64,000 nucleotides of DNA from Macrostomum lignano (lineage: Eukaryota). Positions within the stretch are counted from its first letter, which is position 1; the number at the start of each line of letters is the position of its first letter. The position numbers were made by a program, and so were the translations under genes. Shown in pieces: positions 4,917 to 44,109 of the stretch. The DNA is taken from positions 248,001 through 312,000 of the forward strand of contig NIVC01000677.1 of the NCBI GenBank assembly GCA_002269645.1. Direction: 5' to 3'. The notes under the pieces were generated by a model. The model saw nothing but the letters and a program-made list of their open reading frames with translations. It ran no database searches and had not been told where the DNA came from.

Positions 4917-7348
4917 ATGGAGACTGTCAAACAAGAAGCCGCTTCACCGTCGGTGCAGCCGGACGATTGCCTGTCCTGCTGCGTTGACACCTGCATTGAC
5001 AGCCTGCTGGAGGTGAAGCGGGCGGCGGCGGCGGCTTCGGGACCTGTCATTGACGAGGCAATGACGCGGGATGCTGAAAGGCAGCGGCTGGCTCGGATTG
5101 AAGCCAATTTAGCCTGGCTGATGGAGCAGAAGGTGCGTGCGGCCGGGTTTTTATAAAATTGGAATTCTCAGAGTTTATTCCTTTAGCACATGTTGTCCTG
5201 CAGTTTTTTTTAAAAAAATGCAAAAATGCAAAAGTAGGCATTCTGTGTTGTAGCTTGCTCCAGACCAAAGAAAAGGCATATATGCTCCCAAAAGCATTCT
5301 CCATCAGAGAAAGTTGCAGTAAACAATACATGTAGACAGACAAAAGCTTAAGGGCAAAGAAGCCACTCAGTAAATAAAGTTTTAAAGTCTTACTTCTGTC
5401 AATATCGTCAAAGGTCGTATTTTATGTACATTTGGCTTCCGTGATTTCAGAAAGACATTTGAAAGTTGACTACTACAAGTAGTGCAGAGAGGAAGCGCCG
5501 GAATCGGAACCGAGCCAACTCTCTAAGGATTAATGGGATTTTGTGCAAATTAATTGGCTCTAGAATGGCTACGAGTTCGAAGTATCATTTCCCTCCACTT
5601 GAGCAGTGCTCACCCGACCTCCGCTGCCTCTTCCAGCGCGAGCTCAGCGCCAGTGGCGCCGACCTGCTCCGCCAGCTGCGGGCCTGCAGCCGCGTGGCCG
5701 GCCAGATTCGGGCCCTGCAGACGGCGGGTGGGGCTGCACCTCCTCCGACTGTCGAGCCACCGCGGCCTCAGCGGGAGGCGGAGAGTCGCCAACAGTTGCA
5801 GCAGCAGCAGCAGCCTCCGCCGCCGCCGTCGCCGCCAACACAGCAGCTGCGCAGTGATCAATTTCTACAGTCGAGTTCACTCCGTCATCGTCTCCTGAAG
5901 CCTCCGCAGCAGCCGATGCAGCATCGACACTGCCAGCCTCCGATGCCTCATCAACTGCTACAGCAGCAGCAACAGCAAAAACAGCAGCAACAGCAAAAAC
6001 AACAGCAACAACAACAACCTGTAAGGTAAAGATATGCTCTTGATTCTGTCTGTCCACTGTCCCATGCTTTTTTATTTTCGGCTCCATGAGTTTTGAGTCA
6101 TGCCTCAACTCATTCAATCGGCTATGGAGTCGATCGTTGGTGTTATGCTCGGACATGAATTGATTGACTAGTTAGATCTCCTCTCCTCTCCTCTCCTCTC
6201 CCCTCTTCTCCCCTCCTCTCCTCTTCTCTCCTCTCCTCTCCTCTCCCCTCCTCTCCTCTCCTCTCCTCTTCTCTCCTCTCCTCTCCTCTCCTCTCCCTCC
6301 TCTCCTCTCCTCTCCTTTTCTCTTCTCTCCTCTCCTCTTCTCTCCTCTCCTCTCCTCTCCTCTCCTCTCCCCTCCTCTCCTCTCCTCTTCTTTCCTCTTC
6401 TCTCCTCTCCTCTTCTCTCCTCTCCTCTCCTCTTCTCTGCTCTCCTCTCCTCTCCTCTCCTCTCCTCTTCTCTCCTCTCCCCTCCTCTCCTATCCTCTCC
6501 TTTCCTCTTCTCTCCTCTCCTCTCCTCTCCTCTCCTCTCCTCTCCCCTCCTCTCCTCTCCTCTCCTTTTCTCTTCTCTCCTCTCCTCTTCTCTCCTCTCT
6601 CTCTCCTCTCCTCTCCTCTCCCCTCCTCTCCTCTCCTCTTCTTTCCTCTTCTCTCCTCTCCTCTTCTCTCCTCTCCTCTCCTCTTCTCTGCTCTCCTCTC
6701 CTCTCCTCTCCTCTCCTCTTCTCTCCTCTCCCCTCCTCTCCTCTCCTCTCCTTTCCTCTTCTCTCCTCTCCTCTCCTCTCCTCTCCTCTCCTCTCCTCTC
6801 CTCTCCTCTCCTCTCCTCTCCTCTCCTCTCCTCTCCTCTCCTCTTCTCTCCTCTCCTTTCCTCTCCTCTTCTCTCCTCTCCTCTTCTCTCCTCTCCTCTT
6901 CCCTCCTCTCCTCTCCTCTCCTCTCCCCTCCTGCTTCTTTTCTCTGGAGAGACCCAAAAATCATTAGCGTTCCTCTCCGCGCTGCCCAACCCTCCTCAGA
7001 GTCGCCGGTCCAAAGCAGCAGCCGCAGCCGCGCCGCCGGCATCACACCGAATCGGCAACTGTTGTCGGCGGCGAACTCAGCGGCAGCCGCCGACTCAGCC
7101 GGTCGCCGCACCAGTTGGTGGCAGTCAGCGGCTCCGATCTGGACGTTCTGTGGCGTCGGAGTCAGCAGCAGGTCGCTGCGGCAGCCTTGCCTGTTGGACA
7201 GCAGCAGCAGCATCAGCGCCCTCGGATGCAGCTGTTCCTGCGATTCGGTGGCGGACCCGACCGCCTTGGCAACCCAGCTGGCGAGGTCCGGAAGTCATTC
7301 AGCGCTATTGGCAGCGTCGGCAGAGGCGCCGTCAGAACCCTGGTGTAG
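4917..7348 (+). CDS. Putative multi-exon orphan gene, coiled-coil and Q/P-rich; exon joining uncertain
   Basis: Candidate exons: 4917-5132 (METVKQE..., donor AAG|GTGCGT), ~5565-6020 (MATSSKY...poly-Q, donor GTAAGG) and 6968-7348 (after cattAG, phase 0). No known domain. The exon1-exon2 phase is unresolved and all three frames of the last exon are open. Confidence 0.35.
6179..6930. repeat. (CTCCT)n polypyrimidine microsatellite
   Basis: About 750 bp of almost pure C/T pentamer repeats. Confidence 0.97.
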
Positions 7349-9514: not shown

Positions 9515-10051
9515 TCACAGGTAGCGGCTGGTGTACGGTCGGTAGTAACAGCTGGTCCTAGCGCCTTCAGCCAGCAGTTCGTCAACCGCGGCAGTCGCGG
9601 CGGCCGAAGCTCGCCGACTCCGCAGTAGTCGTTTTGTCGCCAACTCGCCGTCGCCGTATTTGCGCATCCCCTCGGCGTAGCCGCGCAGATAATCGCCGTA
9701 ATAATCGTTGTAGCTGTAGTAGCCGCTGTACCAGGGTCTGTAGCGCCTGTAGTCGGCGTAGTAGTAGTTGTAGTAGTAGCTGCTGAACGGGTAGCCGTTC
9801 GGGTAGCGGCTCCAGTCCAGGTAGTAGCGGCTGGTCCGGTAGGTCGGGTAGGCAGCAGCTGGCGGCGGCTCCAGGTAGTAGGGCCAGCGCCTGTACTCAT
9901 AGTAGTGCTTAGCGCAGCAATAGGGAAAGCCGGCCAAACTGCAGGCGAAATTCGTGCCGCCTCCGTCCAGCTCGTCGGAAAGTGACTCCGACTTTCTGGA
10001 GTTCAATCGGTCAGCTGAGACTGCGCGCCTCATCCTCAGGCTGGTTGTCAT
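9515..10051 (-). CDS. Tyrosine-rich orphan protein (~178 aa)
   Basis: Open frame after acceptor ctgtcctgtccAG with ATG at 10051. About 33 Tyr, mostly TAC codons, with non-repetitive flanks (MTTSLRMRRAVSADR...; ...YRPYTSRYL*). Confidence 0.65.
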   Translation of the reverse strand: MTTSLRMRRAVSADRLNSRKSESLSDELDGGGTNFACSLAGFPYCCAKHYYEYRRWPYYLEPPPAAAYPTYRTSRYYLDWSRYPNGYPFSSYYYNYYYADYRRYRPWYSGYYSYNDYYGDYLRGYAEGMRKYGDGELATKRLLRSRRASAAATAAVDELLAEGARTSCYYRPYTSRYL

Positions 10052-10678
10052 GCTCACCTGGACAGGACAGCTGACCCTTACACTTGAAGTTTGGCGTTCT
10101 TTTTAATCAGGGCGGGCAGACCCAGCGTGCGAGCTTTTTGTGTGTTCAATTTTCTCTACTCCATTCCCTCCTTCTGCCGGCCTTATTGGCCTATCGTTGG
10201 TTAACCGCGCGGTCTCAGCATATGGAACCGGTTCAATCTGGTTCGTCCTGCCATCTTCTCTTCCCTTCCTGCCCAGCCTCCACTCAAGGCCGCCCATTGT
10301 GTGCGTGTGTTTGTGTGTGTGTGTGCGTGGTCAGAGCGTTTAGAAAAATCAGGTGGAGGCGACTAGAGACGGAGATCAGAAACATGGAGACCGCGATAAA
10401 CGAAGAATCTGGGATTGTTCTACTCGTATAGTGGAGCTGCTGCGTCATCTGTTACCGAAGTTATCATAACTTCTGTTTGGTCGAACCGAGTTCTATAAAC
10501 TTGGTCTGATTTTAAAGCTGAATAACCAATAATTTCAAGTTAAATATTATGAGCTCTTTTCGACAAAAGTTTCGCAAAAATGCCATCCTGAGATAGACGT
10601 CAAATTTCAAAGGTTGTGCTGTCTTTAATAGGCTCTATATCCTGTGAGAACTACAGAGAGAATTCATTCTGTCTTATA

Positions 10679-10945
10679 GGGGTTCCAGCCTAGTGGTTAG
10701 GGCGTCAGACTCACGACTTGAAGGTCGGCGGTTCGATTCCCGATCCCACTGGAACAATTTGTGTCCTTGAGCAAGACACTTAACTCTGCATTGCTTCAGT
10801 TCACCCAGCTGTAAAATGGGTGCCAGCATTAGCTGGGGTAATTGAGGCTGTGTGTGTGTGGCGACCCATCAGTCTTGAGACTGAACAGCCGTACGCAGCC
10901 TTCAGATGCGGGTTAAGGCAGGTGTAATCAATTATTTTTTATCAA
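10679..10945 (+). mobile_element. tRNA-derived SINE with CORE-like domain (family A, copy 1)
   Basis: A-box-like agcctagtggttagggcg and B-box ggttcgattccc, then gtgtccttgagcaagacacttaac...cttcagttcacccagctgtaaaatggg (MIR/CORE-like) and an AT tail. A second copy is at 15414. Confidence 0.85.
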
Positions 10946-11831
10946 TTACCAGTCTTAATGTGAGACCAAATAGAAAGCTGCGATACTTCAGTAAATTCTG
11001 TATTCCAGACTAACACTCCCGGCCTCCTTGGTAGTCGCAGGCCTGAAAACTGGGATAGAGACGGTTCTGTGGTAAACAGTCCAACCCCAGCTAAGCCCCC
11101 CCCGCTGCGTTGGCAAACACTGCCCATTCCCCAGCAGCTCCATCCTAGCCCTTGCAGTCTCACGGCCCTGCCAGCCTCTCTTGTTCAAAGACAATTAACG
11201 TCGATGAAGAGAGAGACTGAAGATGCCTATAGGGTCACAGCTTCTGAATTATTCTCAATGAGCGATGATGAAGTGGAGCCGGACTGCTAGCAGTTGAGCA
11301 CTTTGTGTTGAAAACTTTTAATTTAAATGAAATGCAAGACGCTAGAAAGCTTAACTGAAAAGAAAAAGCTCACCAAAAAAACTCTCACTTGACGGAAAGC
11401 ACCGAACTCTATACTGAGTCTGCCAATAGAATACATAGAGAGTTGGCCTCTTCTGAGCTGTTTGCTCTCGTGTAGGAGAGGAGATGGCGCAGTTTCTCTC
11501 GTAATTGCTTGCGGGTCATAAAACATTGAGCGCACAGCCCCTGGCTCAACTGCGCAAATGCTATAACTGTTAGCAAAGCTAGTCTTTCATAGCGACCTTG
11601 CATTCGCTCTGGCGACAGCCCCACCATGTCCGTTCCGCTGAACCTTGAGCACGTACAGGCACACAGTCCACCCTTCCGTGATGGGTAGATTTGCACCTGT
11701 GTCTCGCTGAGGCTGCGGGTTCCCTAAGCTGGATTGGCGGAGCCAATCCATGCAAATGATAGTGAGCCTTTGCAGAGAGGTGCCCCCTTATAGCTCCACT
11801 GAAGGTTGTGATCTTTTAGTTGGAGGCAGGG

Positions 11832-12190
11832 GACTGTGTGCACCCTGGTGCACCTTTAAGCGACATTGTCACACAACCAGCGAGAGGCATTGGTGCCCAT
11901 TCCGCCGACTCCCCTGAGCAGGCACACAAGCGCGCGGGTACGTACGCAGTCACACGCGCAGGCACACATTCATACAGAAGTGTACAGCGGCCCTAACTTT
12001 ATTTATTTATCGCTAGGCATGTACACTTCACTGTGCCTTTGGGGTTGGCCATCAAGCTTGGTGTTAATTGCTCGAGCAGAGCCAAGCCGAAATTCCAATT
12101 TAGCTCCAAATTAATGTGACTGCACTTGGAATCGAGCCTGGGCCGCTGGCACATCAGATCGCCGCGGCAGACCACTGGGCCACGGCCCTC
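11832..12190 (-). mobile_element. tRNA-headed SINE-like repeat (family B, copy 1)
   Basis: Reverse complement of 18958-19315 over ~360 bp. The head has tggcccagtgg (A box) and ggctcgattcc (B box). Confidence 0.8.
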
Positions 12191-12799
12191 CCGCTGAAGG
12201 TGGCCCGAGCACTGAAGGTGGCCCTCCCACTGACTCTTGGAGCACCCATCCCTGTTCCAGCGGCAGAGCCATCTCCGCGCTCGCATAATCTTGGCACCCC
12301 GTACTGGAGGAACAACTGCAAAGAATGGTAATTCGTAAAAATGTCAGACGGATATAAAAAGTAAGGTATAATGAACCCTGTTAGAGCTGAAGCTGCTATA
12401 CTTATCATATCAAAGATAGAAAGAGAATGCTGGCGATGGCGATGGCTTTCTTAGACTTGAAAGTTAAGCTAAGTTGGACGTGGTTAGTGTTAAGTGCTAC
12501 GAGGGTGCTACGTGCTACATGTAAATGGGATAATCCAAGAGGCAGTCTCGGTAGGGACGTTGACACCTGGCCGCCTTGCTGTGGCTCAGGCGTGCTTCTA
12601 CCTATTCTAGCTAGCTAGCTATTTGAGTAATCTCAAGCTAATTCTTTTGGTTCTTGCTCCGGCGGATTGATTTGGCTTAAAAATCTACGTTAAATAAAAA
12701 GTACTTTTACAAGAACACAAGAACAATACAACTATTTTCCAACGGTTTCTAGTGGTAACGACGGGGTATCAGAGCATCCAGAAAGCCTTAGTAAGTCAT

Positions 12800-15700
12800 T
12801 CAAACGGGTAGCAGCCGTTGCACACTCTTCGATAGCGCCTCGACCTTCGCTGAATCCAAACCGGCCAAACAAGCTGAGACGCAGTCGGACACGCAGCTGA
12901 TGAGGCTGCGATTCTGGCGTCCGCCCAAGCAGCTGGGCAGGTAGGTCAGGAAAGTCTCCGGATTGCTCACCGCTCGCTGCAGCTGGGCCTCATAGTGCTC
13001 ATTCCAGCCAGCTGGACTGTGCTCAGCCGTGTTGCTAGTGTAACCAAATAGAGTCACGATGCCGGCCGCCAGGGAGGCTGACTCGGCCGCCTGGCCCGCC
13101 TCGGCCAGCAAGTGGGTCGGGTCCGGCATGGCTCCGCTGCCGGCGCCGTCGCCGCCTCCCGCTGGGTCGCTCGTCATATCAACTATCTGAGCATTTGTTT
13201 GAGGCACATTTGAGAATACAGTCATTCGTTCAATAAGCTTCAGTTCCTGTCCGGTCATTGATGGAAAGATTTTTAAGCTTCATTTTAGATTTTCTTTAAT
13301 GACTGGACAGGAACTGAAGCTCATTAAATGACTGGACAGGAACTGAAGCTCATTAAATGACTGGATAGGAACTGAAGCTCATTAAATGACTGGACAGGAA
13401 CTGAAGCTCATTAAATGACTGGACAGGAACTGAAGCTCATTAAATGACTGGACAGGAACTGAAGCTCATTAAATGACTGGATAGGAACTGAAGCTCATTA
13501 AATGACTGGACAGGAACTGAAGCTCATTAAATGACTAGACGGGAACTGGAGCTCATTAAATGACTGGACAGGAAGTGAAGCTCATTGAATGAGCGGACGG
13601 GAACAGAAGCTCATTGAATGACCGGACAGGAAGTGAAGCTCATTGATGACCGGACAGGAACTGAAGCTCATTGAATGACCGGACAGGAACTGAAGCTCAT
13701 TGAATAACCAGACAGGAACTAAAGCTCATTGATTAAGAAACAGCACTCAAGTTCACGATAACAATCAGAATCCCAGCTAGGAAGAGATTGGAGCCTCACC
13801 AGCACATTTGAGGGCCTGTAGTCCATTGGCCGATAGTGCAACTCGGCAGAGGCAAAGTTCGCCTGGCACATCAGCAGACTGCGCATCCAGACAAGCCTAT
13901 CAACATCTGTAATGGAATGCGGATGCAGTTCTGATAGAAACCTGCAACTGGCTTCGTTAGTGAGCACTCCTAGCAGCAGTTGAACGTCGTCAGCCTTGTC
14001 TGTAGCCGCTGTTTCCGTAGTGCCGCTGTCACAGTCGGGCTCGTCAAGAAAGAACCAGGCAAACTGCACTGAGCTGGGCAACTTTGATCTGACAATAAAG
14101 TTGTAAGAGGTGCATCTTTTTCAGCATGATATCGCATATTCGTACGAATTCTTTCAGAGAGAAGATCGAGTCAATGGCTTATGCATCCAACGTTTTGCTA
14201 ACCTATTCCCCACTTGGCCATAGAATACAGAAAACGTATTTATTCCCCACTTTGGCCCAGCCATAGACTACAGAAACGTATTTATTCCCCACTTTGGCCC
14301 AGCCATAGACTACAGAAACGTATTTATTCCCCACTTGGGCCCAGCCATAGACTACAGAAACGTATTTATTCCCCACTTGGGCCCAGCCATAGACTACAGA
14401 AACGTATTTATTCCCCACTTGGGCCCAGCAATAGACTACAGAAACGTATTTATTCCCCACTTGGGCCCAGCCATAGACTACAGAAACGTATTTATTCCCC
14501 ACTTTGGCCCAGCCATAGACTACAGAAACGTATTTATTCCCCACTTGGGCCCGGCCATAGACTACAGAAACGTATTTATTCCCCACTTTGGCCCAGCCAT
14601 AGACTACAGAAACGTATTTATTCCCCACTTTGGCCTAGCCATAGACTACAGAAACGTATTTATTCCCCACTTGGGCCCGGCAATAGACTACAGAAACGTA
14701 TTTATTCCCCACGTGGGCCCGGCTCAAGAATAAACAAACGTATTTGGTTGGTGTTTTTTGGGCCAGGCCAAATAAATACTTTTCTGCAGTCTATTTGACG
14801 TTGACGTTTGACGTTGTTTTTAGAAATGCGCTACTTTGACTACTACGGTATTTAGGTAGTATAAAAGTATGCGTAACGAATAAGGTAAAAATGGTATAAA
14901 CTACTGCTGAAGTAGGCATTGAAGGATCTTGAGCTTATTTACACGCATAGCATTATAACTTAAGGCACAGACAAGTTATCCCTATAGAGCCCCACAACCT
15001 GTGCTAGGCAACCTTCATCCGCCTTACTCACCTCAGCCGCATCGCGCTGCTCGCCATCCGCTTCAGACAGTCGGCGGGCAGGCGGAGACAGCGGCAGAGC
15101 AGGTCCGCAGCTCGGCCTCCGCTGATCCGCGGTCTCAGGATGCAGCGTCTTCGACTGCCAAGCTGGGGACAGCGGAGATTGGAGACTTCCTGCTGGCACT
15201 GCCGTACCTGCTCGCCTGTAAGATTGCAGTGAATTTATGAATAAACAATTTCAAAATGATTGAAGCGACTTAACAACATAGATGAGTTCACGTCAACATA
15301 CTGCCGTAATTTAACTCCAACAAATTGTCTACTAGACCTGACCCTAAATCCTAATCTACATGTACATGGAAATCATCGCCAAACCTTTGACCAGATCCTT
15401 GACAGATTCGTAAGGGTTATAGCCTAGTCGGATTCACGACTTGAAGGTTGACTGTAACAATTTGTGTCCTTGAGCAAGACACTTAACTCTGCATTGCTTC
15501 AGTTCACCCAGCTGTAAAATGGGTGCCAGCATTAGCTGGGGTAATTGAGGGTGTGTGGCGACCCCCTCCCCCCCCAGTCCATGCACTGAACAGCCGTACG
15601 CAGCCTTCAGATGATGCGGCTGAGCTGTCGGTTGCACATCTGGCTCAATTGGGGCAGGTGTAATCAATTATTATTATTACGAGCTATTGACAGCACACTA

Positions 15701-18176
15701 AACCGAGGCTATCATACTTGCATTTATTAGACCTTATTTTTATGATCGAGTTTTGAGCGATGAGTTTCCATTTCTCAGCAACCGTTCTACATATAATAGA
15801 AATATACGTGTATTTGAGCTAAATTTCAGACTTCTAAGATCTCCCACCAGGGTTGGCCATACTCACATTCGCGAGTGACATTGGAAGCATTCCAGCGCAG
15901 CTCCGTATCCATCCCAGTGAGCTTGAAGAGCAGAACTGTCAGATCCCGCTTAAGCGGCTTCAGGCGCAGTTTCTTTTCGACACTGTCGAAACTTCTCTGC
16001 CGCAACTCGTCGAGCTGAACGGTCAGCCGATCCTCGATGTCCGTCTTCTTCTGGCACAGCTGGGCGCAGTAGAGTTCGATGGCTTCGCCAGTCAGCTTTC
16101 GAAGGTCAATGCCGGCCAGGAAGTAGTCGAGCTGTCGGGTTCGCTTGTCCGGAGATTTGGAGGCCACTAGCTGGGCGAACTCAGCTGTGCGGACAAGTCT
16201 GGGCAGGGCCTGGCGCATGCCATCGACTAGATGGCTTGCACAAAGGTCACCGAACTCGGTATCATTTGGCTCAAAGGTGCATTTTATTATTGCCAGATCA
16301 TTATGAAACTCTTCCGCGGAGCTGCACAAGCCTTCTATGACACTGTGAGCTGTGTGCGACAATACTGACCTAGCAAGGACCTCTTTATATTTGGATCGAA
16401 GCTCAGCTTTCAGGTGGCTAACTAAGATATCCTTGAAGCTGCATAGCAGTCTGACGGCTGCTTGAAATTCTCTGTTTTTGCCTTGAGTCAGACTAGCAAT
16501 GAGCTTGGCCTCAGCTTGGCGCATCACAAGGCTTACGTCAGCGGCGGCCTGCATTTTGGCACCGTCGCGAGCAAATTGGTTCTTTAGGACGTTCAGCTCA
16601 CTCTCGGGGTCGCTCAGGTCCAGCAGCGAGTCCTCCGCTGCCACTGACAGCAGAGCCTTGCTGATTCTTTCGTAGGTGTCTTTAATTACGCGGAGCGCCC
16701 GGGACATCAGCTCCATTGGCATCTCGGTAAGGCTGGAGGTCACAACGGAGGACAACTTGAAGGCTAGCAGGTGAACGGAGGCCAGCATCAATAGACGCTT
16801 CATAATGGCCATCGCATCTGTAAGCTTCTGCCGAGCGTTGGCGTAAACCAGCGCAGCAATTCGAGCCTCTAGTTCCAGGAATGAGTCCAGGTATGGCGGG
16901 TGCGGCACGGGCCAATTGTTCGATAAAAAATTCTCCACTGACTTGGCCGACACGCCGAGCAGAGCGGTTTCGCTGCCGGGGGTGATGCAACCTGGATGGT
17001 ACTGGCTGAATGACTCCATGACGCTTCCCATGCGCTTCAGCATGTGCTCTTGGCAGTGCGCCGAGTACTGAAATCCTTCAATATCATTCTCCAGGCTTTT
17101 AACTACCTCCTCCTCGTCGCTAGAGTCCTTGCATAGAACGTCATTGGACAAGTTTTTGTAGTAACTTTTTATGCAGCAATCAATCTGGTTGGCAACGAAC
17201 ACTTTTTGCATACTGCTGTGCTCCTCCATCAAGAACCGGATGTTCTCAGTGTCCTGCAAGTTTGTAAATGTTGATACACTTTTTCTGAAGATGATACTAT
17301 AGAAAGAACTTATCTAAAGTCTGCAACTTTCAACTGTCAATTAATCAATTTAGAATGCAATTCGCTCGTATAGGAGCCGCCTACTTCACATTTTAGAACT
17401 GAGATTAACTTTCTTACACAGGCATTCGAAAATGTACCTTCTAGGCATCACAAACTCACAGGCTCTGGCTTGTATCCTTCCGTGCCATTAACAGTGTACA
17501 CGACTATGGCCGACTTGGCCCCGTTCAAAAAATTTTGAACGGTCTCATTCATTTGAGCATTCTCGCCCATGCCGGGACTGTCCACCAGCTGAAGGTTGTA
17601 TCGAAGTAGTTCATTGGGCAACGACACCTTCACCATCATTGCAGTGTTTCGATCCTCCCGCTCGTTCCCTTTGAGGTCGATGTACTCTCGTAACTCCCTG
17701 CTATCCTCGAAGGCTGTCGTATCAACGATCGCCTGACTAGTTATTACGTCCTGGATTGACACTGTCCTGCTCGGTCCGTGGCTAGTGCAGGTAAGTCTGG
17801 CGGTGCAGGTGTGCTGAGCGGTGGGAAACAGACCGGTTATTCGACTGCTTGCCGGAGATTCCTGCCAATCCCGCAGCAGCTGGTTTAGCAGTGTCGACTT
17901 GCCCGTGTTGCTGCGGCCGAACACGATCAAGGACAGAGTGAGCTGGCTCTGCAAGATCTCGTCCAGCTCGTTCAGCTCGTCCAGCTTCGTGTCTTCATCG
18001 GTCGCTTCGCATTCGATTTTCAAGTCGTGCATCAGTCGCATGAGCTCGCCAAGATACTCAGCGAGGCGGACAAACCGGGACTCGCGATACCGCAGCGCCG
18101 CCACCAGATCGCGTCTGGAGGACTGAAAGCGCACTTCATAGTCGGCACGGTCAAGCTTCTGCGCTGTCTCCTCCAT
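12800..18176 (-). CDS. Dynamin-like GTPase fused to a degenerate kinase (DSTYK-like architecture), ~987 aa, 5 exons
   Basis: Exons 18176-17460, 17253-15867, 15215-15032, 14088-13800 and 13186-12800; all four GT-AG introns are phase-compatible (0,1,2,0). Motifs: G1 GRSNTGKS, G2 TCTA, G3 DSPG, G4 ANQID, G5 VSAK, then a helical stalk. The C-terminus has kinase-like DYRPSNVL/IVDMT remnants. Confidence 0.8.
13229..13732. repeat. 29-bp minisatellite (atgactggacaggaactgaagctcattaa)n with an inverted copy (foldback)
   Basis: About 15 units at 13298-13732; 13229-13261 is the reverse complement of one unit, separated by a 36-nt spacer. Confidence 0.9.
14204..14730. repeat. 42-bp intronic minisatellite
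   Basis: About 12.5 units of tattccccacttgggcccagccatagactacagaaacgtatt in intron 3 of the GTPase-pseudokinase gene. Confidence 0.95.
15414..15679 (+). mobile_element. CORE-like SINE (family A, copy 2; B box deleted)
   Basis: The CORE segment is near-identical to copy 1; part of the tRNA head is missing; ends in an (att)n tail. Confidence 0.85.
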
Positions 18177-18957
18177 CTTTAGTTGCGAGGCTGGCTAGCT
18201 TTGCTTGCGCACTTTCTTGTGTCAGTTTGGGGCTTCGGCGCCTGGTCAAGTAGGTACTGGAAACAGCCGAAGCGAGAGTCGCAGAGCCTTGCGTAGTGGC
18301 ATGCACGTATTGCTGCACAGCCAGCAAGGCTGGGTGTGAGACGAAAGCGAGAATTACTGCAGCTATGTGCACAATGCTACAGTGTACACTTGTACATTGC
18401 GTGGCTTTTTCATCTGTACTGTTGCAAGATAGACTGCGTCTGTTAAACACTGACGTCTTGTTTTCTCTGCTTTAATACAATAATGCGATTTCATAACTTG
18501 CTTCTCTCCTACTATTCAAATTGTTTAGAATTTCAGACAGGCACTGGCTAGACAGTGTTTGAATTTCACAGGGTGTAATCTTTACCTTTGCCCGTCATTT
18601 AATACTTGCTTTTGCTTTTTGTCGATTGTCATTATTAATATATGGTAACTCCCATAAAGTTAAAAAGAAAAGTAAACAATTGAAAGGGACAATTAGGGAC
18701 CGACCGACTTCAATTTTAATTCATGCCTCCAGAAGAAGAATATAGAATTCATGCACAGTAGCCATTAAGAAGTACAAGAAGTCCGCTATACTAAAAATGA
18801 ATTGTGGATATCTAGATATTATTTTCCTTAAGAAAGAACAATAGTGACTGTACAAGGTCAGAAGCTATTTAAACTATTTTATTCATTTCTTTGTTGCTTC
18901 CACATTGGGAGGGAGCGCAGATTGCTAGTGGACTACTATAGTGGGACTTTACATAGT

Positions 18958-21872: not shown

Positions 21873-22781
21873 TCAGCAGACGCCGTCCATCGCGCGGATC
21901 TCCTCAGCGGTCATCGCCCGTTTTACTATGGTGAAGCACTGGAACACTCCGTTGAACGTGTTGCCCTCGGCAATAGCGTAGCCCAGCCGAATGGCGTCCG
22001 GCGTGTAAGCCGAGGTTCCCCGCGCGTTGGAAGTGACCTCCTGCTCAGCGCCGGACACGAACAGCCTGGCTCCGTTGCAGCCGTTCAGCACGAAAGCGAG
22101 CGACACCGACTGCTCGCTAGTGCCAATGGGCATCACGCTCTCTTTAGAACGGAACGAGCAGGGCCAGACGAAGTAGAAGTGCACAAATCCGGATCTCTCG
22201 TAGAAGAAACCGGGTCGATCGACCGACGGCCCCTTGGCTAAGTTGTAGACGCTGAAGAACGCCCGGTTGTTGCTAGCTGAGTCCGGGTAGGCTCGCTGCA
22301 CCTTGAGAAAGAAGGTCAGGTTCTGCGGCGGAGCGGCCAGAAAGGTGCCTAGACCGAGCAAGTCAATGTAAGAGCTGAACTTGCCGAGAAAATTCAGCCC
22401 GACGCCGTCGATCTGATCTACGCCGACGTACTTCACATCCGTTGAATTGGTGATCGAGTGGCCTGTTAGAAATCGTTGGTCAAAGCCGAGCAGCAGCTGC
22501 GTGTCCCCGTCGTCCACGGCCAGCTTGAGGTGGCTGACGGCACCGGGCTGGGCGACCCAGCCGGCAGACCAGGCTGTCGAGTTGCCCAGCCAGCAGTGCG
22601 GCGCGACGTGTTGAGCCACCCGACAGTCCGGGTCGGCGGCGCACTCGACCTGGCAGCTGGCCGGGGCTGACGCGCCCGTCATCAGACGGACGCCGGCAGT
22701 GGCGTTGCGGACAGCGGCTGGCAGCGCGGTCGGCACGGCTCGGAAGGACACCCGCTGGCTGCTGGCTGCTACAAGCTCCCT
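21873..22781 (-). CDS. PAN/Apple-like plus LamG/ConA-like jelly-roll protein, terminal exon (5' end unresolved)
   Basis: ~300-codon open frame with CQVEC...DCR...HCWL (PAN-like) and a C-terminal FNGVFQCFTIVKRAMTAEEI (LamG/pentraxin-like). There is no in-frame ATG before the PAN region; candidate acceptor ctcAG before 22781. Confidence 0.7.
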   Translation of the reverse strand, partial: RELVAASSQRVSFRAVPTALPAAVRNATAGVRLMTGASAPASCQVECAADPDCRVAQHVAPHCWLGNSTAWSAGWVAQPGAVSHLKLAVDDGDTQLLLGFDQRFLTGHSITNSTDVKYVGVDQIDGVGLNFLGKFSSYIDLLGLGTFLAAPPQNLTFFLKVQRAYPDSASNNRAFFSVYNLAKGPSVDRPGFFYERSGFVHFYFVWPCSFRSKESVMPIGTSEQSVSLAFVLNGCNGARLFVSGAEQEVTSNARGTSAYTPDAIRLGYAIAEGNTFNGVFQCFTIVKRAMTAEEIRAMDGVC

Positions 22782-28300: not shown

Positions 28301-30957
28301 TGTCCCAACTACTTGATCCAGCCTCGCACCTGTCCCTCTCCGCTATCAGCTGGTGTCCCAACTACTTGACCCAGCCTCGCACCTGTCCCTCTCCGCTATC
28401 AGCTGGTGTCCCAACTACCTGATCCAGCCTCGCACCTGTCCCTCTTCGCTATCAGACGGTCCAAGCTACCTGACACTCCGGCCGTACACCAACCGGATGT
28501 ACCAGATGTGCAGCAAGTGGCGCCTGGTGATCTCATTGCGCCACGCAGAGGAACAAATGCGACAGCGGGGCACCAGCTTCCTCACTGGATCCGGTGCCGT
28601 CTTCAGCCACGAGGAGTTCACGCCGTTTACAGTTTGCATGGCAAATCCGAATCTGGAGTCTGTGCTAGGTAATCAAGGCTCGCAGGACTCGGCACTTTAT
28701 TTCTGTTTAGCGCGGCCCTACTTTTGAGGAAAAAGTATTAAGATCATAGAACAATTATTGTAATATTGTTTAGAAAAGAAAGAATACTTCACAGCTCTCA
28801 ATATTTGCTACCATTCTTCTGCATGAGTGCTCTCAACACTCGTTATTTACATTTCAGCCGTTCATCCAGGCAGATATCTGGCTAAACCAGTCGGGTAAGA
28901 GCCCTATCGTTATTCACGTTCCCAGCGAACTAAACATTTTGTCACAAAAAACTCTGCTAAGCATGCTTCTGACTTGAGTAGTTGGCAATTTTTTCCATGA
29001 TGCTTTTGCAAACTGGCTGAGGGCAAGTAAAAAATCCTCAACGGGAGCTGGGGCACTTTAGTGGATTAGTTACGCTCGTATTTGGCTTTAGTGCAGCGTT
29101 TGGGTGCAGTAGACACGCACTTATCGGCAGCACTGCCCGCCTCTAAGCACCAAGCCTGAATCTGATAAAGCATCCAAGTCACGAGAGTTTGCGCTCTACC
29201 CGTGGCTAAGCGCCGTCAATTTCAGCGGCAGCATGGGCGACAAGATGCAGCTGGTTAAGATCAGACGGGACCACGTCCGGGAAGACCTGCTCAACTTTTT
29301 GACCAACAGCGAGTTTCAGAAGATGTCCAGCGCTCAGGTTATTATGCAGCAGTACATTGAGCGGCCGCTGGTGGCCGACAAGCGCAAGTTCGACCTGAGA
29401 GTCTACATGCTGGTGGTCAATCCCAAGCGGGCCAGGACCGATCCATCTGGCTGCACTGAGGGTGAGTGCTGAGTGCCCAGTCTGAAGCCTCTATCTTTTA
29501 GCGTTAAAATGCTCCTGAAATTTCATTGCCATCCTACTGTGTGTCTGCCATGGTAGAAATCTACTGGCCTGTTCCGCACAGAAAATATATTGGTTGTTGG
29601 ATTGGCATTAATCTGTGAGACGCTCATTAGGTTAAGTGCTGGGTATTTTTTACCCGACTCTATATTTTTAGTCTGTACTTCCCTCAAGGCTGATGATGAG
29701 ACCAGAGATACTTTCGGAATGGATGCGAACTCGCGTTCACACCGTCATCAATAGAGCCATCGAAAAGCGCATGATTGATTTACAAAGGGACGAAAGTACA
29801 TGTACGTATGTACATCACGCAAAATCAACCTTATACGAGCTATTTAAATGGTGTGAATGGGACTTAAATTTTTGGAGCAAAATATCGAAAAATTTTGTGG
29901 AGTTTCGTGTGCATGCACTCAAAGGGCGTCGCCATGCACCGAGGGCAGGGGGGACGGACATGCCAGTGCTTTGTCCCCCCCCCCACCAAACCTCGTGACC
30001 CATTATGGAAATCAATAACTTTGCTTCAGGGCGACAAAATATAGTGCCTGTGGCGCCAAAATGAGTGTCTGCGGCGCCAAAATGAGTGCCTGCGGCGCTA
30101 AAATGAGTGTCTGCGGCGCCAAATGAGCGCTGACAACGCCTATTCTGGAAATAATGTACACCACCAAAAAATCCATGGCGACGCCCCCGCATGCACTGCT
30201 GAGCTGTGTAAACTCGGGTTGCATCGTTTCGAGAAATCTCGATACACTGCAAAGTGGATTCTGTAGCATTACCGATGAATTTAACTACGAGCGTATTTGC
30301 ATTGCATGTACCTTGAAACCAATAATCGCTTGTAAATAACTTTTTGCAGACTGCGAGATGGGCTACTTTGTGTTCATGCACCCGGGCTTCGTGCGGCTCA
30401 GCTCGCTGCCCTACAATGCCGCCTCGCCGGACCTGGCCGTCCACCTCACCAACCAGAGCGTGCAGGCCAAGCAGACCAGAACGTTCGGCCAGCTCAAGGA
30501 GGTCACCACCTGGTTTCCGGACGAGCTCAATGACTACTTCAACAAGCGGCACCGGCTGCGGGATCGCGACTGGGCCAAGCGGGAGCTGTACCCGAAGATC
30601 GGCGCCCTGCTGGGCTACGTGTCGGCCGTGTTCCGCTACTTCCTCGACGATCGCGACTGTCCGAGCAACGCGTTTCGCATCCTCGGCGTCGACTTTCTGA
30701 TTGACGACGAGCTCCGAGTCTACCTGCTGGAGTTCAACGCCTACCCGGCCTGGGGCTGCCAGACCTCCGTGCTTGCCGCGCTGAAGCCCAGCCTGTGGCG
30801 CGAGGCCGTCTGCCTGTCCAGCGAGGTGGCGATTCGCTTCCGGAGCCGCCTGCCGGTGGCCGAGCAGCACCTGGTCACCAGGCAGGACTTCGGCCTGGTG
30901 TTCAGCTCCGAGGAGCCGGAACTGGCCCGGCGAAATATTGCTAAGATTTACAAATGA
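25389..30957 (+). CDS. TTLL10: Tubulin tyrosine ligase-like protein, TTLL10-type glycylase
   Basis: Well-supported exons: 27763-27893, 28456-28668, 28858-28894 (YLAKPVG), 29226-29461 (QQYIERPLVADKRKFDLRVY) and 30350-30957 (GFVRL, HLTNQSVQ, FRILGVDFLID, LLEFNAYPA), all phase-compatible. The 5' exons (~25389-25608, ~27614-27721 with FWIG) are tentative. Confidence 0.85.
25798..26540. repeat. 30-bp intronic minisatellite (gatagtcctcagtgtgtgactggggctggt)n
   Basis: About 24 units. Confidence 0.95.
26543..27568. mobile_element. Non-autonomous foldback Mutator-like element, 1026 bp
   Basis: 9-bp direct repeat CTGGTGAGC at 26534-26542 and 27569-27577. GGG...CCC termini and imperfect TIRs built of 14-bp (agatttcgtctagc) subrepeats; AT-rich non-coding interior. 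Confidence 0.85.
27915..28455. repeat. 53-bp intronic minisatellite containing acceptor-like sequence
   Basis: About 10 units, each with ctctccgctatcAG; the last unit supplies the real TTLL acceptor. Confidence 0.93.
29920..30189. mobile_element. hAT-type MITE, 270 bp
   Basis: TIRs caaagggcgtcgccatg / catggcgacgcccccg; 8-bp TSD CATGCACT at 29912-29919 and 30190-30197; internal 21-bp repeats. Confidence 0.8.
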
Positions 30958-39000: not shown

Positions 39001-39167
39001 ACAAGAATATGTGGGAGCTCAAACCGGAGTACAGGCACTACAAGCGGAAGCAGTCTATTGAAGATGCTGACGCTAAAATCGGCGGCGCTGCCGGCAACGC
39101 GTCCACATCGATGGACGATGGAGATGGCGATGCCGCTGACGGCACTGACGATTTGCAAGTGGTCTGA
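36025..39167 (+). CDS. GTF2F2: General transcription factor IIF beta subunit (RAP30), 3 exons
   Basis: Exons 36025-36444 (LDLSKAKQPLWLVKVPKYL), 36701-36916 (VECRP...MRLKR) and 38763-39167 (LFVAFEKHQYYTVRDLVDITKQP...WELKPEYRHY); phase-0 GT-AG introns. Confidence 0.95.
36555..36697. repeat. 24-bp intronic minisatellite (atgagaatcgcccccaacacagct)n
   Basis: About 6 units; the last is a variant that forms the exon-2 acceptor. Confidence 0.9.
37145..38700. repeat. 38/40-bp intronic satellite with higher-order structure
   Basis: gatagacatacgcagttgatatggaccacagacacaga(ga) units, interrupted periodically by gacaagcagacagagataggcatcc. Confidence 0.95.
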
Positions 39168-43222: not shown

Positions 43223-44069
43223 AGTGTCTGTCTGTCTGTCTGTCTGTCTTAGTGTCTACTTGTCTGTTTATCTGTCTGTGTCTGTCTGTCTGATGCCCAA
43301 ACGTCACCCTCCTTTCATCCGTAGCCCGCAGGCAGTCAGCAGCCGCAGCAGCATCGACAGCTGCCAGCACTTCCAGCAAGCAATCAGCAAGTCGCCAGTG
43401 CCGGCGCACCATCTGAAGACGCCCTGGTCAAGCGCCTAATGGATCTGGAATCGCGCCGAGCCCGCCTAGACCAGACCCTAGAGGAGCTGGCCGACTTGCG
43501 TGCCGACGCGTCCACAACCAGCACGGAGGTGCAGGCGGCGGCCGGTTCGTTCAGCGCCAGACAGACGGCGGGCGAAGCCGCCCAGCTGCTGGGAGCCATG
43601 GAGACGATGCAGGCCCGCCTGGACCGCCTCCGCTCCGTCCGCGATCGTTTGGAAAGCGTTCGCCAACTGGCTGACGACTATCGACGATCGGGGACCTCGC
43701 TGTCGACTAACCAGTCTGGCGGCGGCGGCGGCCAGAATGGCGATGACGATGGTGATGGAGGCAACGCGGAAGCTTCGGCTGCCGAGCGGGAGCTGCGCCA
43801 GCTGGTGCTGGAGCGACAGCGCCTGGTGGATCTGCAAACCCAGCTGGAGCTGCTGCACTCTGCCGCTGGTCGAGACGCTGCGGCGGCGGCGGCCGCTCTT
43901 GCCGCTGCCGAACAAGAAGACAACGACGAGGAGGCCGCGGGCCAGCAAGAGGAAGAAGAAGAGGAACAGGCCGATGCTGACGATGACGAAGACGATGAAG
44001 ACGGCGATGATGACGCTTACAACGATGGCGACTCGGCGACGTTCCCGGCTGGCCTGGAGGCGCGAGAGC

Positions 44070-44109
<40 letters not shown>

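What the first reader, a model, noticed from the sequence alone, without database searches (positions are those of the whole stretch)
12800..18176. Intact dynamin-like GTPase fused to a dead kinase: the mirror image of DSTYK
Seen: five phase-compatible exons give ~987 aa. The N-terminus has complete G1-G5 motifs (GRSNTGKS, TCTA, DSPG, ANQID, VSAK) followed by a long helical stalk. The C-terminus keeps kinase spacing but has no GxGxxG and no obvious beta3 Lys; HRD appears as HYRPMD-YRPSNVL and DFG as DMT. Known: DSTYK pairs a degenerate GTPase-like N-terminus with an active kinase, and dynamin-superfamily GTPases (Mx, GBP, bacterial DLPs) remodel membranes and act in defence. Inference: a GTPase-active, pseudokinase-regulated membrane-remodelling or immune protein, possibly from a lineage-specific family.
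Basis: partly seen in the sequence, partly recalled or inferred. Interest (0 to 1): 0.78.

Follow-up and report, generated by a model that had tools for sequence, protein, structure and literature searches.

The report
Flatworm DSTYK paralog with dead kinase
This is a real, already annotated five-exon flatworm (Macrostomum lignano) gene: a fast-evolving extra copy of the DSTYK family that keeps a working-looking dynamin/mitofusin-type GTPase while its kinase domain has decayed almost beyond recognition.

Summary
On the minus strand, five GT..AG exons (18176-12800) encode a 987-aa protein identical to GenBank PAA78592.1 (Macrostomum lignano BOX15_Mlig033244g2, "hypothetical protein"). That model comes from a transcript-based annotation. 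The N-terminal 700 aa form a BDLP/mitofusin-class dynamin-like GTPase with intact G1-G4 motifs (Pfam Dynamin_N 2e-11; Foldseek BDLP 7e-14).

The interpretation needs correcting. This is not a mirror image of DSTYK; it is a divergent member of the DSTYK family.
- Its closest relatives outside Macrostomum are invertebrate DSTYKs (hhalign E 4e-37). All of them carry an intact dynamin P-loop, so the intact GTPase is the ancestral state.
- M. lignano also has canonical Dynamin_N+Pkinase DSTYKs. In a sister copy of the locus, one lies about 75 kb away on the same strand.

The C-terminus is best read as a decayed kinase domain:
- MAFFT alignments are in register (YR-PM-D for HRD, DMT for DFG).
- hhalign gives P about 0.01, reached by 0 of 250 shuffles.
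- An intron sits at the identical position and phase just after the "NVL" of the catalytic loop.

Direct detection fails, however. Pfam and a family-specific HMM find nothing, AlphaFold2 confidence is low, and Foldseek is not significant.

Function is inferred: a GTP-driven membrane tethering or remodelling protein with a pseudokinase scaffold. Interest is moderate.

The parts
17460..18176 (-). Exon 1 (aa 1-239): N-terminal long helix plus the first half of the G domain, including G1 GRSNTGKS, G2 TCTA and G3 DSPG. The ATG is at 18176-18174.
   Evidence: ORF and splice reconstruction. 100% match to P0289. The intron after aa 239 (phase 0) coincides with an intron of canonical M. lignano DSTYK.
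18177..18178 (-). AG immediately upstream of the ATG. Candidate spliced-leader trans-splice acceptor, or the acceptor used in the fused 1619-aa model.
   Evidence: Sequence AAAG|ATG. The fused UniProt model P0291 joins upstream exons exactly at 18176. M. lignano has widespread trans-splicing and multi-gene precursors (PMC5730564). This is an inference.
15867..17253 (-). Exon 2 (aa 240-701): the rest of the G domain (G4 ANQID, G5 VSAK) and the helical stalk.
   Evidence: AF2 gives helices H358-692. Foldseek matches BDLP and mitofusin.
16921..17942 (-). Dynamin-like G domain (aa 79-350; interrupted by intron 1 at 17459-17254).
   Evidence: Pfam Dynamin_N E 2.4e-11, 44.4 bits against a cut-off of 27. 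AF2 pLDDT is mostly 80-93. hhalign to the DSTYK family gives E 4e-37.
15032..15215 (-). Exon 3 (aa 702-762): the degenerate kinase N-lobe start (ISGGRAADLL in place of the glycine-rich loop; CLKRM is the candidate beta3 strand).
   Evidence: Splice model. MAFFT alignments A9 and A10. AF2 pLDDT below 40.
13800..14088 (-). Exon 4 (aa 763-859): the rest of the N-lobe-like region, the alphaE-like helix and the catalytic-loop remnant HYRPMDYRPSNVL.
   Evidence: hhalign local match to the DSTYK kinase alphaE and catalytic loop, P 0.01-0.024, reached by 0 of 250 shuffles. The exon ends at the same column and phase as the canonical DSTYK exon ending in ...ANVL.
12800..13186 (-). Exon 5 as annotated (aa 860-987 of the 987-aa model): the DFG remnant IVDMT, the APE remnant LLAE, C-lobe-like helices and the stop codon TGA at 12802-12800.
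   Evidence: Identical to PAA78592.1. Conserved at 33-39% identity in paralog Mlig020050. AF2 C-lobe helices have pLDDT 55-88.
13187..13246 (-). Alternative in-frame 5' extension of exon 5 (20 aa, ELKLIERMTVFSNVPQTNAQ). It would restore the beta7-beta8 spacing between the catalytic loop and the DFG remnant.
   Evidence: Canonical AG acceptor. Only one difference, a synonymous one, from copy g3 across these 60 nt. Canonical DSTYK and paralog P0292 have 8-10 residues here. Use of this acceptor in vivo is not known.
13298..13730 (.). Intron-4 minisatellite (29 nt x 15). It is the inverted complement of the alternative acceptor region (13229-13259).
   Evidence: TRF. Inverted matches. The pre-mRNA hairpin has dG -53.6 kcal/mol and z -7.9 and buries the upstream AG.
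14217..14745 (.). Intron-3 minisatellite (42 nt x 12.6). It is the source of long spurious repeat ORFs on both strands.
   Evidence: TRF. ORF list.

Best explanation
The region is the transcript-supported gene BOX15_Mlig033244g2 of the flatworm Macrostomum lignano. It is a divergent, Macrostomum-restricted paralog of the DSTYK ('dusty' kinase) family.

Shown by the evidence:
- The family's ancestral layout is an N-terminal helix, a BDLP/mitofusin-class dynamin-like G domain, a long helical stalk and a C-terminal protein kinase.
- This gene keeps the first three parts. The GTP-binding and hydrolysis motifs are intact: G1 GRSNTGKS, G2 Thr in TCTA, G3 DSPG, and G4 NQID (NRID in sister copies).
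- Its kinase domain has diverged into a pseudokinase-like remnant. The glycine loop is lost. HRD has become YR-(PM)-D, with a two-residue insertion. DFG has become DMT. No alphaC glutamate is evident.
- The annotated splice form also removes the beta7-beta8 segment.

Inferred, not shown:
- The protein binds and hydrolyses GTP and dimerises through its G domain, driving stalk rearrangements as BDLP and mitofusins do.
- It probably acts on endolysosomal-type membranes, where vertebrate DSTYK promotes vesicle fusion.
- The dead kinase serves as a regulatory or docking module, possibly pairing with the canonical DSTYK kinases encoded nearby.
For: Gene model
- It is identical to PAA78592.1, which comes from a transcript-based annotation (PMC5730564).

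GTPase
- Pfam Dynamin_N passes its gathering cut-off.
- AF2 models the G domain at pLDDT 80-93.
- Foldseek PDB: BDLP 7e-14; MFN2/MFN1 1e-10 to 1e-8 with TM about 0.6; then DynA/B, IniA, SynDLP and Fzo1.
- The G motifs are invariant between the two Macrostomum paralog groups, which are only 45% identical across the G domain.

DSTYK membership
- In an exhaustive HMMER search, the best hits outside Macrostomum are 870-955-aa proteins. They carry Dynamin_N plus Pkinase, and NCBI names them DSTYK or DSTYK-like.
- hhalign gives prob 99.9 and E 4e-37 over aa 63-442.
- A co-linear stalk match covers aa 608-651 (0 of 60 shuffles reach it).
- M. lignano has canonical DSTYK copies.
- One of them lies about 75 kb from sister copy g3, on the same strand of contig NIVC01000921.1.

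Kinase origin of the C-terminus
- Two independent MAFFT alignments are in register across the whole domain.
- The hhalign local match falls at alphaE and the catalytic loop through alphaF, with P 0.01-0.024. 0 of 150 and 0 of 100 shuffles reach it.
- The intron after ...NVL has the same column and phase as in canonical DSTYK, and a second shared intron lies in the G domain.
- The domain is conserved at 35% identity in the intact 1021-aa paralog P0292.

Function lead
- Vertebrate DSTYK localises to late endosomes and lysosomes, and its overexpression fuses them into large vesicles (PMC6981171).
Against: - No kinase family is detected by Pfam at E up to 10 or by PDB sequence search.
- A DSTYK-specific kinase HMM scores the C-terminus no better than shuffled sequence.
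- AF2 gives pLDDT below 50 for aa 694-812 and 856-911, and a mean of 54 for the C-terminus alone.
- Foldseek on the C-terminal model finds nothing below E 2.7. Twenty of the 31 weak hits are kinases, but the input alignment contained real kinases and may bias the model.
- The NJ tree puts the window clade on a long branch outside all other DSTYK-like proteins, so the time of duplication is unresolved.
- dN/dS against copy g3 is 0.61 overall and 0.88 in the G domain, on small counts. This is compatible with relaxed constraint after recent genome duplication.
- No biochemical, localisation or expression data were found for this gene in the papers and supplementary files searched.
Confidence: 0.78

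Rival explanations
1. The C-terminal 300 aa are not kinase-derived. An unrelated, mostly helical domain replaced the kinase, through exon shuffling or de novo sequence, so the 'kinase motifs' are coincidence.
For: - Pfam, PDB phmmer and a family-specific HMM all fail.
- The AF2 N-lobe region is unstructured or low-confidence.
- Foldseek is not significant.
Against: - The hhalign match lies at the co-linear, correct position and is beaten by 0 of 250 shuffles.
- D-Y-R-P-S-N-V-L sits at the right distance after an alphaE-like helix and before a D-x-x motif.
- The intron position and phase directly after NVL are identical to canonical M. lignano DSTYK.
- Total length and domain order match the family.
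Confidence: 0.1
2. The gene is a decaying duplicate with little or no function, a pseudogene in progress after the recent genome duplication in M. lignano.
For: - dN/dS is 0.61 overall and 0.88 in the G domain between copies g2 and g3. Of the 39 sites that vary among the four copies, 24 lie in the G domain.
- One copy of the sister paralog (L001) carries three 1-nt deletions in the C-terminal region.
- The annotated acceptor deletes 20 codons of the former kinase core.
Against: - The roughly 1000-codon ORF is intact in three Mlig033244 copies and in Mlig020050g1.
- The two paralog groups are only 38% identical, yet they keep every G motif and a 13-residue identical P-loop block.
- Stalk dN/dS is 0.16 and C-terminal dN/dS is 0.40.
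- The gene models are transcript-derived.
- The single-base deletions in L001 may be PacBio assembly errors.
Confidence: 0.08
3. The C-terminal domain is still an atypical active kinase or nucleotide-binding module, not a dead one.
For: The window copy keeps the catalytic-loop Asp and Asn (D852, N857), the DFG Asp (D882), the APE Glu and a candidate beta3 Lys (K752).
Against: - The glycine-rich loop is degenerate (SGGRAAD).
- No alphaC Glu is evident.
- There is a two-residue insertion inside HRD.
- The alphaF Asp is replaced.
- Paralog P0292 has Cys for the Asn and Arg for the Lys.
- The annotated isoform lacks beta7-beta8.
- AF2 cannot build an N-lobe.
Confidence: 0.1
4. It is a lineage-specific immune or defence GTPase comparable to Mx, GBP or IRG proteins.
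For: - It is restricted to Macrostomum, present in several copies, and shows an excess of amino-acid changes in the G domain.
- Mx and IRG structures appear far down the Foldseek list.
Against: - The best structural and sequence relatives are BDLP, mitofusin and DSTYK, not Mx, GBP or IRG.
- The copies are explained by the known redundancy of the assembly (PMC5730564).
- The genomic neighbours are housekeeping or developmental genes.
- There are no expression data.
Confidence: 0.04

Closest known systems
[quoted passage not shown] The invertebrate members include the canonical M. lignano copies BOX15_Mlig021056 / 014911 / 016260.
   Same: - Same length (about 900-1000 aa) and same domain order.
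- The N-terminal helix, dynamin-like G domain and early stalk align at E 4e-37.
- The conserved stalk segment before the kinase also matches.
- The C-terminal domain aligns in register with the kinase.
- Two introns share position and phase.
- Physically linked, about 75 kb apart, in a sister copy of the locus.
   Different: - The kinase domain cannot be detected by Pfam, whereas canonical copies score 1e-37 to 1e-42.
- The catalytic motifs are degenerate.
- The gene sits on a long branch outside the other family members.
- It is a paralog, not the ortholog of vertebrate DSTYK.
- Vertebrate DSTYK shows the opposite decay: a degenerate P-loop with an intact kinase (using a sequence recalled from memory).
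Hemichordate and cnidarian 'DSTYK-like' proteins with weak kinase domains, e.g. Ptychodera XP_070553793, Glandiceps XP_077983941 and Nematostella XP_032222785.
   Same: An intact dynamin P-loop with a degenerate kinase: Y-x-D/N-L-K-x-x-N in place of HRD, 'INxCK' in place of DFG, and the activation segment shortened.
   Different: - They are still weakly recognised by the Pfam kinase models (E 1e-2 to 1e-9).
- In the NJ tree the hemichordate proteins form a clade of their own, separate from the window clade.
- Their kinase decay therefore looks independent of the Macrostomum case.
BDLP and mitofusin class of the dynamin superfamily (Nostoc BDLP 2j68/2j69, MFN1/MFN2, Fzo1, DynA/B, IniA).
   Same: - G-domain fold and motifs, with flanking helical bundles. 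Foldseek gives E 7e-14 to 1e-8, with up to 770 aligned columns to BDLP.
- PDB phmmer's best hit is BDLP.
- The G4 variant NRID/NQID resembles mitofusin's NRWD (from my own knowledge, not tested here).
   Different: - No transmembrane segment or conserved hydrophobic paddle. The most hydrophobic 19-mer averages 1.76 on the Kyte-Doolittle scale and is not conserved in the paralog.
- Sequence identity is only 12-16%.
- It carries a kinase-derived C-terminal domain that these proteins lack.
ROCO proteins such as LRRK2 (Roc GTPase, COR, kinase).
   Same: One polypeptide combines a GTPase, a helical or dimerising linker and a kinase or pseudokinase. This gives a precedent for regulatory cross-talk between GTPase and kinase. 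LRRK2 appears among the weak Foldseek hits of the C-terminal model.
   Different: The GTPase class is unrelated (Ras-like Roc rather than dynamin-like), and there is no homology outside the kinase fold. This is an analogy only.

Membership tests
Dynamin superfamily (BDLP/mitofusin class) | Large G domain matching Dynamin_N above Pfam's curated threshold | tested here: met
   PF00350 E 2.4e-11, 44.4 bits against a cut-off of 27, aa 84-230.
Dynamin superfamily (BDLP/mitofusin class) | G1 P-loop GxxxxGK[ST], G2 Thr, G3 DxxG and G4 [NT][KR]xD | tested here: met
   GRSNTGKS, TCT(A), DSPG and NQID (NRID in sister copies and the paralog). The G4 Lys is replaced by Gln or Arg, while the specificity Asp is kept.
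Dynamin superfamily (BDLP/mitofusin class) | G domain flanked by long helical bundles (neck/trunk or stalk), with the predicted fold matching solved members | tested here: met
   AF2 gives helices 10-78 and 358-692. Foldseek gives BDLP 7e-14 and MFN1/2 at TM about 0.6.
Dynamin superfamily (BDLP/mitofusin class) | GTP hydrolysis stimulated by G-domain dimerisation; membrane binding and remodelling | not testable with these tools
   Needs recombinant protein, GTPase assays and liposome assays.
DSTYK family | N-terminal region homologous to the DSTYK N-terminus (dynamin-like G domain plus stalk) | tested here: met
   hhalign prob 99.9, E 4e-37, 337 columns. The top HMMER hits outside Macrostomum are proteins named DSTYK. 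A stalk segment also matches.
DSTYK family | C-terminal protein kinase domain of the 'dusty' type | tested here: inconclusive
   - Not detected by Pfam or by the family HMM.
- hhalign P is about 0.01, at the right place.
- A shared intron follows NVL.
- AF2 and Foldseek are weak.
- Best read as a degenerate derivative.
DSTYK family | Shared gene structure or linkage with bona fide family members in the same genome | tested here: met
   Two of the four introns have the same column and phase as in P0262, and a third has the same phase 11 columns away. Copy g3 lies about 75 kb from canonical DSTYK on NIVC01000921.1.
DSTYK family | Orthology to vertebrate DSTYK | tested here: not met
   M. lignano has separate canonical DSTYK copies that cluster with the other kinase-intact DSTYKs. 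The window clade is a separate long branch.
Active eukaryotic protein kinase (ePK) | Glycine-rich loop GxGxxG | tested here: not met
   SGGRAAD aligns to GSGAQGE.
Active eukaryotic protein kinase (ePK) | beta3 VAIK Lys paired with an alphaC Glu | tested here: inconclusive
   K752 or R753 aligns to the Lys, depending on the alignment. The paralog has Arg. No Glu lies at the alphaC position.
Active eukaryotic protein kinase (ePK) | HRD catalytic loop (HRDxKxxN) and DFG | tested here: not met
   Y-R-P-M-D-Y-R-P-S-N: His is replaced by Tyr, there is a two-residue insertion, and Lys is replaced by Arg, while the Asp and Asn are kept. DFG has become DMT, with the Asp kept.
Active eukaryotic protein kinase (ePK) | Bilobal kinase fold | tested here: inconclusive
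   AF2 gives moderate confidence only for C-lobe-like helices. The best Foldseek E is 2.7, to EphB3, BRAF and FAK.

The most novel reading that the evidence does not exclude
The DSTYK family as a whole may be an ancient fusion of a mitofusin/BDLP-type membrane-fusion GTPase with a kinase. On that reading, this Macrostomum paralog is a natural separation-of-function form in which only the GTPase engine is kept. It would show that the GTPase module has a kinase-independent job, such as GTP-driven tethering or fusion of endolysosomal membranes. The dead kinase would then act as an allosteric partner of the canonical DSTYKs encoded nearby. It would also give a mechanistic handle on the unexplained cell biology of human DSTYK (lysosome fusion, SPG23, urinary-tract malformations). 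In the open literature I could search, no paper connects DSTYK with the dynamin superfamily. Sequence databases do already tag invertebrate DSTYKs with Dynamin_N.
Probability: 0.3. Interest if true: 0.7.

Novelty: new variant of a known kind. Interest (0 to 1): 0.5.

Why it matters
DSTYK is an understudied human disease kinase (SPG23 spastic paraplegia, urinary-tract malformations). The function of its N-terminal region is not discussed in the papers I could search.

This locus and its relatives show that the family began as a dynamin/mitofusin-like GTPase joined to a kinase, and that different lineages have disabled one engine or the other. Vertebrates lost the GTPase motifs. This flatworm paralog, and independently some hemichordate paralogs, lost the kinase.

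M. lignano carries both the double-intact form and the kinase-dead form, and transgenesis has been established in it. It is therefore a practical system for asking what each module does.

For genome annotation the immediate gain is smaller. PAA78592.1 and its copies can be renamed from 'hypothetical protein' to 'DSTYK-like dynamin-family GTPase with a degenerate kinase domain'.

Tried and rejected
- Pairwise BLASTP against a recalled human DSTYK sequence found nothing. The relationship is visible only at profile level.
- Searching search for homologous proteins with a full-length family profile was swamped by generic kinases and did not return the DSTYK family. An N-terminal-only profile worked but still returned no vertebrate DSTYK. 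The vertebrate comparison therefore rests on a sequence recalled from memory and is only a lead.
- A family-specific kinase HMM run with hmmsearch --max scored the C-terminus no better than shuffles.
- AF2 on the full length and on the C-terminus alone gave low confidence in the former kinase region. Foldseek on the C-terminal model was not significant.
- My first frame-repair of the paralog copy in L001 was slightly wrong in the DFG region. The intact copy P0292 reads IQDIDGL there. The statistics were repeated with the true sequence.
- I looked for a paralog or the canonical DSTYK inside the 64-kb window and found none.
- The bacterial promoter/terminator scan and a test alignment were uninformative.
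- P0001 could not be located on a contig, and there was no expression entry for Mlig033244 in the supplementary files searched.
- The NJ tree could not resolve when the paralog arose.

Full report
**1. What is in the sequence**

The finding lies on the minus strand of a repeat-rich eukaryotic window; TRF reports 63 tandem-repeat rows. Three-frame translation and splice-site inspection give five exons with canonical GT..AG introns: 18176-17460, 17253-15867, 15215-15032, 14088-13800 and a last exon ending at the TGA at 12802-12800.

Two in-frame acceptors are possible for the last exon. The one at 13186 gives 987 aa, and the one at 13246 gives 1007 aa. The 987-aa product is identical, residue for residue, to GenBank PAA78592.1, BOX15_Mlig033244g2 of the flatworm Macrostomum lignano. 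Two further near-identical copies exist (g1 and g3; 16 and 35 differences).

The GenBank annotation of that assembly was derived from a genome-guided transcriptome built from RNA-seq, with trans-splice and poly(A) evidence (PMC5730564). The five-exon structure is therefore a transcript model, not only a prediction.

**2. The N-terminal two thirds**

- Pfam finds Dynamin_N at aa 84-230 (E 2.4e-11, above the curated cut-off) and nothing kinase-like.
- The best solved-structure relative by sequence is Nostoc BDLP.
- AlphaFold2 was run on a 33-sequence family alignment. It models a long N-terminal helix (aa 10-78), a confident G domain (pLDDT mostly 80-93) and a helical stalk to about aa 692 at pLDDT 50-79.
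- Foldseek against the PDB returns BDLP (7e-14, 770 aligned columns) and mitofusin 1 and 2 (1e-10 to 1e-8, TM about 0.6). Next come DynA/B, IniA, SynDLP, Fzo1 and LeoA. EHD, Mx and OPA1 appear only further down.
- G1 (GRSNTGKS), the G2 threonine (TCTA) and G3 (DSPG) are canonical. G4 is NQID in this copy, and NRID in the sister copies and the paralog.
- No transmembrane segment is evident.

The sequence therefore predicts a nucleotide-binding, hydrolysis-competent GTPase of the BDLP/mitofusin class. Activity itself is an inference.

**3. Which family it belongs to**

A word-indexed search found only Macrostomum proteins. An exhaustive HMMER profile search of 1.84 billion representatives found two hits below 1e-30, both from Macrostomum. 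After those came a series of 870-955-aa proteins at 1e-18 to 1e-11 that matched only the G domain.

Ten of these proteins were scanned. All have Dynamin_N at the N-terminus and a Pkinase or PK_Tyr_Ser-Thr match at aa 640-930 that ranges from strong (1e-42) to marginal (E 0.01). [quoted passage not shown] They come from hemichordates, a brachiopod, a nemertean, amphioxus and Nematostella.

Profile-profile comparison of the Macrostomum pair with 21 such proteins gives probability 99.9 and E 4e-37 over aa 63-442. A second, co-linear match covers a conserved stalk segment (aa 608-651) just upstream of the kinase, and 0 of 60 shuffles reach its score.

M. lignano also has canonical DSTYK genes with both domains scoring strongly (P0262, P0263, P0265 and others). 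On contig NIVC01000921.1 the canonical gene Mlig021056g2 lies at about 308-312 kb. Sister copy Mlig033244g3 lies at 387-393 kb on the same strand, about 75 kb away. The canonical gene itself sits in a small tandem cluster of DSTYK paralogs. It is not inside the 64-kb window.

**4. The family background changes the reading**

Every invertebrate DSTYK-like protein examined except one has an intact P-loop (P0266 has GKT), and the aligned set keeps the PCT, DxPG and [NTS]KxD motifs with only a few exceptions. An intact dynamin GTPase is therefore the ancestral state, not a peculiarity of this gene.

The human protein, taken from a sequence I recalled from memory and therefore only a lead, scores for Pkinase only. 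Its N-terminus nevertheless aligns to the invertebrate N-terminal profile at E 3e-25, with GQDCNVKC in place of the P-loop and VAPCQG in place of DxPG.

Kinase degeneration has also happened elsewhere. A hemichordate clade and the Nematostella protein have Y-x-D/N-L-K-x-x-N in place of HRD and 'INxCK' in place of DFG. In the hemichordate clade the activation segment is also deleted.

**5. Is the C-terminus a dead kinase?**

Direct detection fails:
- Pfam finds nothing at E up to 10.
- PDB phmmer finds nothing relevant.
- A DSTYK-specific kinase HMM scores the region no better than shuffled sequence.
- AlphaFold2 gives pLDDT below 50 for aa 694-812 and 856-911. Only the helices corresponding to alphaE and alphaF-alphaI reach moderate confidence.
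- Foldseek on a C-terminus-only model has no hit better than E 2.7. Twenty of the 31 weak hits are kinase domains, but that model was built from an alignment containing real kinases.

Four lines of indirect evidence point the other way:
- *Alignment register.* Two independent MAFFT alignments, one anchored by the N-terminus and one of the C-termini alone, place the domain in register across the whole kinase. ISGGRAADLL falls on the glycine loop, CLKRM on beta3, RLVWMRSLLMCQANFAS on alphaE, and HYR-PM-DYRPSNVL on IHR--DVKLANVL. IVDMT falls on LSDFG, LLAE on LAPE, SLAAGIVTLF on DVFSLGIALW, and CVSACL on the CW motif.
- *Profile-profile score.* hhalign of the C-terminus alone against the family picks exactly the alphaE and catalytic-loop region, extending to alphaF when the true paralog sequence is used. 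P is 0.01-0.024. Column-shuffled queries never reach that score (0 of 150 and 0 of 100).
- *Gene structure.* The window's intron 4 falls immediately after ...SNVL in phase 0. In canonical M. lignano DSTYK an intron falls immediately after ...ANVL in phase 0, in the same alignment column. Intron 1 (after aa 239, phase 0) also coincides with a canonical DSTYK intron. Intron 3 has the same phase 11 columns away from another.
- *Conservation.* The domain is 35% identical in the intact 1021-aa sister paralog Mlig020050g1, so it has been maintained as coding sequence.

I conclude, with about 85-90% confidence, that the C-terminus is a strongly diverged kinase domain. By the usual criteria it is a pseudokinase. 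It lacks GxGxxG and an alphaC Glu. HRD has become YR(PM)D, and DFG has become DMT. The catalytic-loop Asp and Asn, the DFG Asp and a possible beta3 Lys survive in this copy, but the paralog has lost the Asn and the Lys.

**6. The last exon and the intronic repeat**

Canonical DSTYK and the sister paralog have 8-10 residues between 'NVL' and the DFG region. The annotated 987-aa form has none (NVL|IVDMT), whereas the upstream acceptor at 13246 would supply 20.

Intron 4 contains a 29-nt minisatellite (13298-13730, 15 copies) that is the inverted complement of the sequence around the upstream acceptor (13229-13259). The pre-mRNA from 13335 to 13180 folds into a roughly 30-bp hairpin (dG -53.6 kcal/mol, z -7.9) that buries that AG.

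One possible reading, not tested, is that the repeat masks the ancestral acceptor and shifts splicing 60 nt downstream, removing the beta7-beta8 part of the former kinase.

**7. Selection**

Against copy g3, dN/dS is 0.61 overall. By region it is 0.88 in the G domain (8 synonymous and 25 non-synonymous differences), 0.16 in the stalk and 0.40 in the C-terminus. Of the 39 sites that vary among the four copies, 24 lie in the G domain. They sit mostly in loop or insert regions, plus the Q/R at G4.

Counts are small and the copies are young, since the assembly is known to be highly redundant (PMC5730564). Over the longer term, the two paralog groups keep full-length ORFs and invariant G motifs at 38% overall identity. 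That argues against a dead gene.

**8. Mechanism (inferred)**

By homology with BDLP and mitofusins, GTP binding should drive G-domain dimerisation and hydrolysis-coupled rearrangement of the helical bundles. Vertebrate DSTYK localises to late endosomes and lysosomes, and when overexpressed it makes them fuse into large vesicles (PMC6981171). That fits a tethering or fusion scaffold.

I therefore propose that this paralog is a GTP-driven membrane-tethering or remodelling protein. Its former kinase would act as a docking or regulatory module, possibly partnering the canonical DSTYKs. The steps that are shown are family membership, motif integrity and the fold of the N-terminal part. GTPase activity, membrane action and any pseudokinase partnership are inferred.

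**9. Novelty and verdict**

The protein is already in GenBank and UniProt as a hypothetical 'Dynamin N-terminal domain-containing protein'. The family is known, and its Dynamin_N tag is present in databases. No paper in the searchable library links DSTYK to the dynamin superfamily, and none mentions this gene.

I class it as a new variant of a known kind: a DSTYK-family member that is GTPase-intact and kinase-dead. Interest is moderate (0.5). The broader point, that DSTYK is a mitofusin-like GTPase-kinase fusion in which different lineages have silenced one module or the other, is the part worth following up.

Noticed in passing
window 13229-13259 and 13298-13730: The intron-4 minisatellite (29 nt x 15) is the inverted complement of the sequence around the upstream alternative acceptor of exon 5. 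The pre-mRNA folds into a roughly 30-bp hairpin (dG -53.6 kcal/mol, z -7.9) that would hide that acceptor. The same arrangement is present in copy g3 (L003).
   Followed up: partly
window 25643-5476 (minus strand): UniProt A0A1I8H6E8 (P0291, 1619 aa) fuses an upstream Laminin_G_3 gene (25643-21879), this gene and downstream exons (12761-5476) into one model. This looks like a multi-gene precursor transcript or a merged prediction. The AG directly before the ATG (18178-18177) fits a spliced-leader acceptor.
   Followed up: partly
L001 13620-13830 (NIVC01004419.1, Mlig020050g2): This copy of the sister paralog has three single-base deletions relative to the intact 1021-aa copy Mlig020050g1 (P0292). 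They truncate the annotated protein to 840 aa. The cause is either PacBio indel errors or a copy-specific pseudogenisation of the C-terminal domain.
   Followed up: partly
L002 484-14152 (NIVC01000921.1): Canonical DSTYK (10001-14152, +) sits beside at least one more DSTYK-like gene on the opposite strand (7214-3236) and a third partial match (1886-484). This is a local tandem expansion of the family in M. lignano.
   Followed up: partly
window 17942-16921 (G domain): Of the 39 amino-acid differences among the four near-identical copies, 24 fall in the G domain. They include Q/R at the G4 motif (NQID in the window, NRID elsewhere). dN/dS there is 0.88, against 0.16 in the stalk.
   Followed up: partly
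window 14217-14745: The 42-nt minisatellite (12.6 copies) in intron 3 creates long open reading frames on both strands (141-194 aa of repeated peptides). These are artefacts of the repeat, not genes.
   Followed up: yes
window 6177-6932; 40059-42202; 52843-54880: Very large simple or minisatellite arrays: TCTCC x 151, a 23-mer x 93, and a 12/16-mer x about 170. They produce spurious ORFs of several hundred aa. The window as a whole has 63 TRF rows, typical of a repeat-rich genome.
   Followed up: no
window 21873-22751(-), 30358-30957(+), 38673-39167(+), 43439-45202(+), 55978-58907(+), 61409-63639(-): The neighbouring genes are ordinary metazoan genes: a ConA-like lectin (Laminin_G_3), a tubulin-tyrosine-ligase family member, TFIIF beta, a PCM1-like protein, a SMAD (MH1 and MH2) and an amiloride-sensitive sodium channel (ASC). 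Nothing links them functionally to the DSTYK-like gene.
   Followed up: partly
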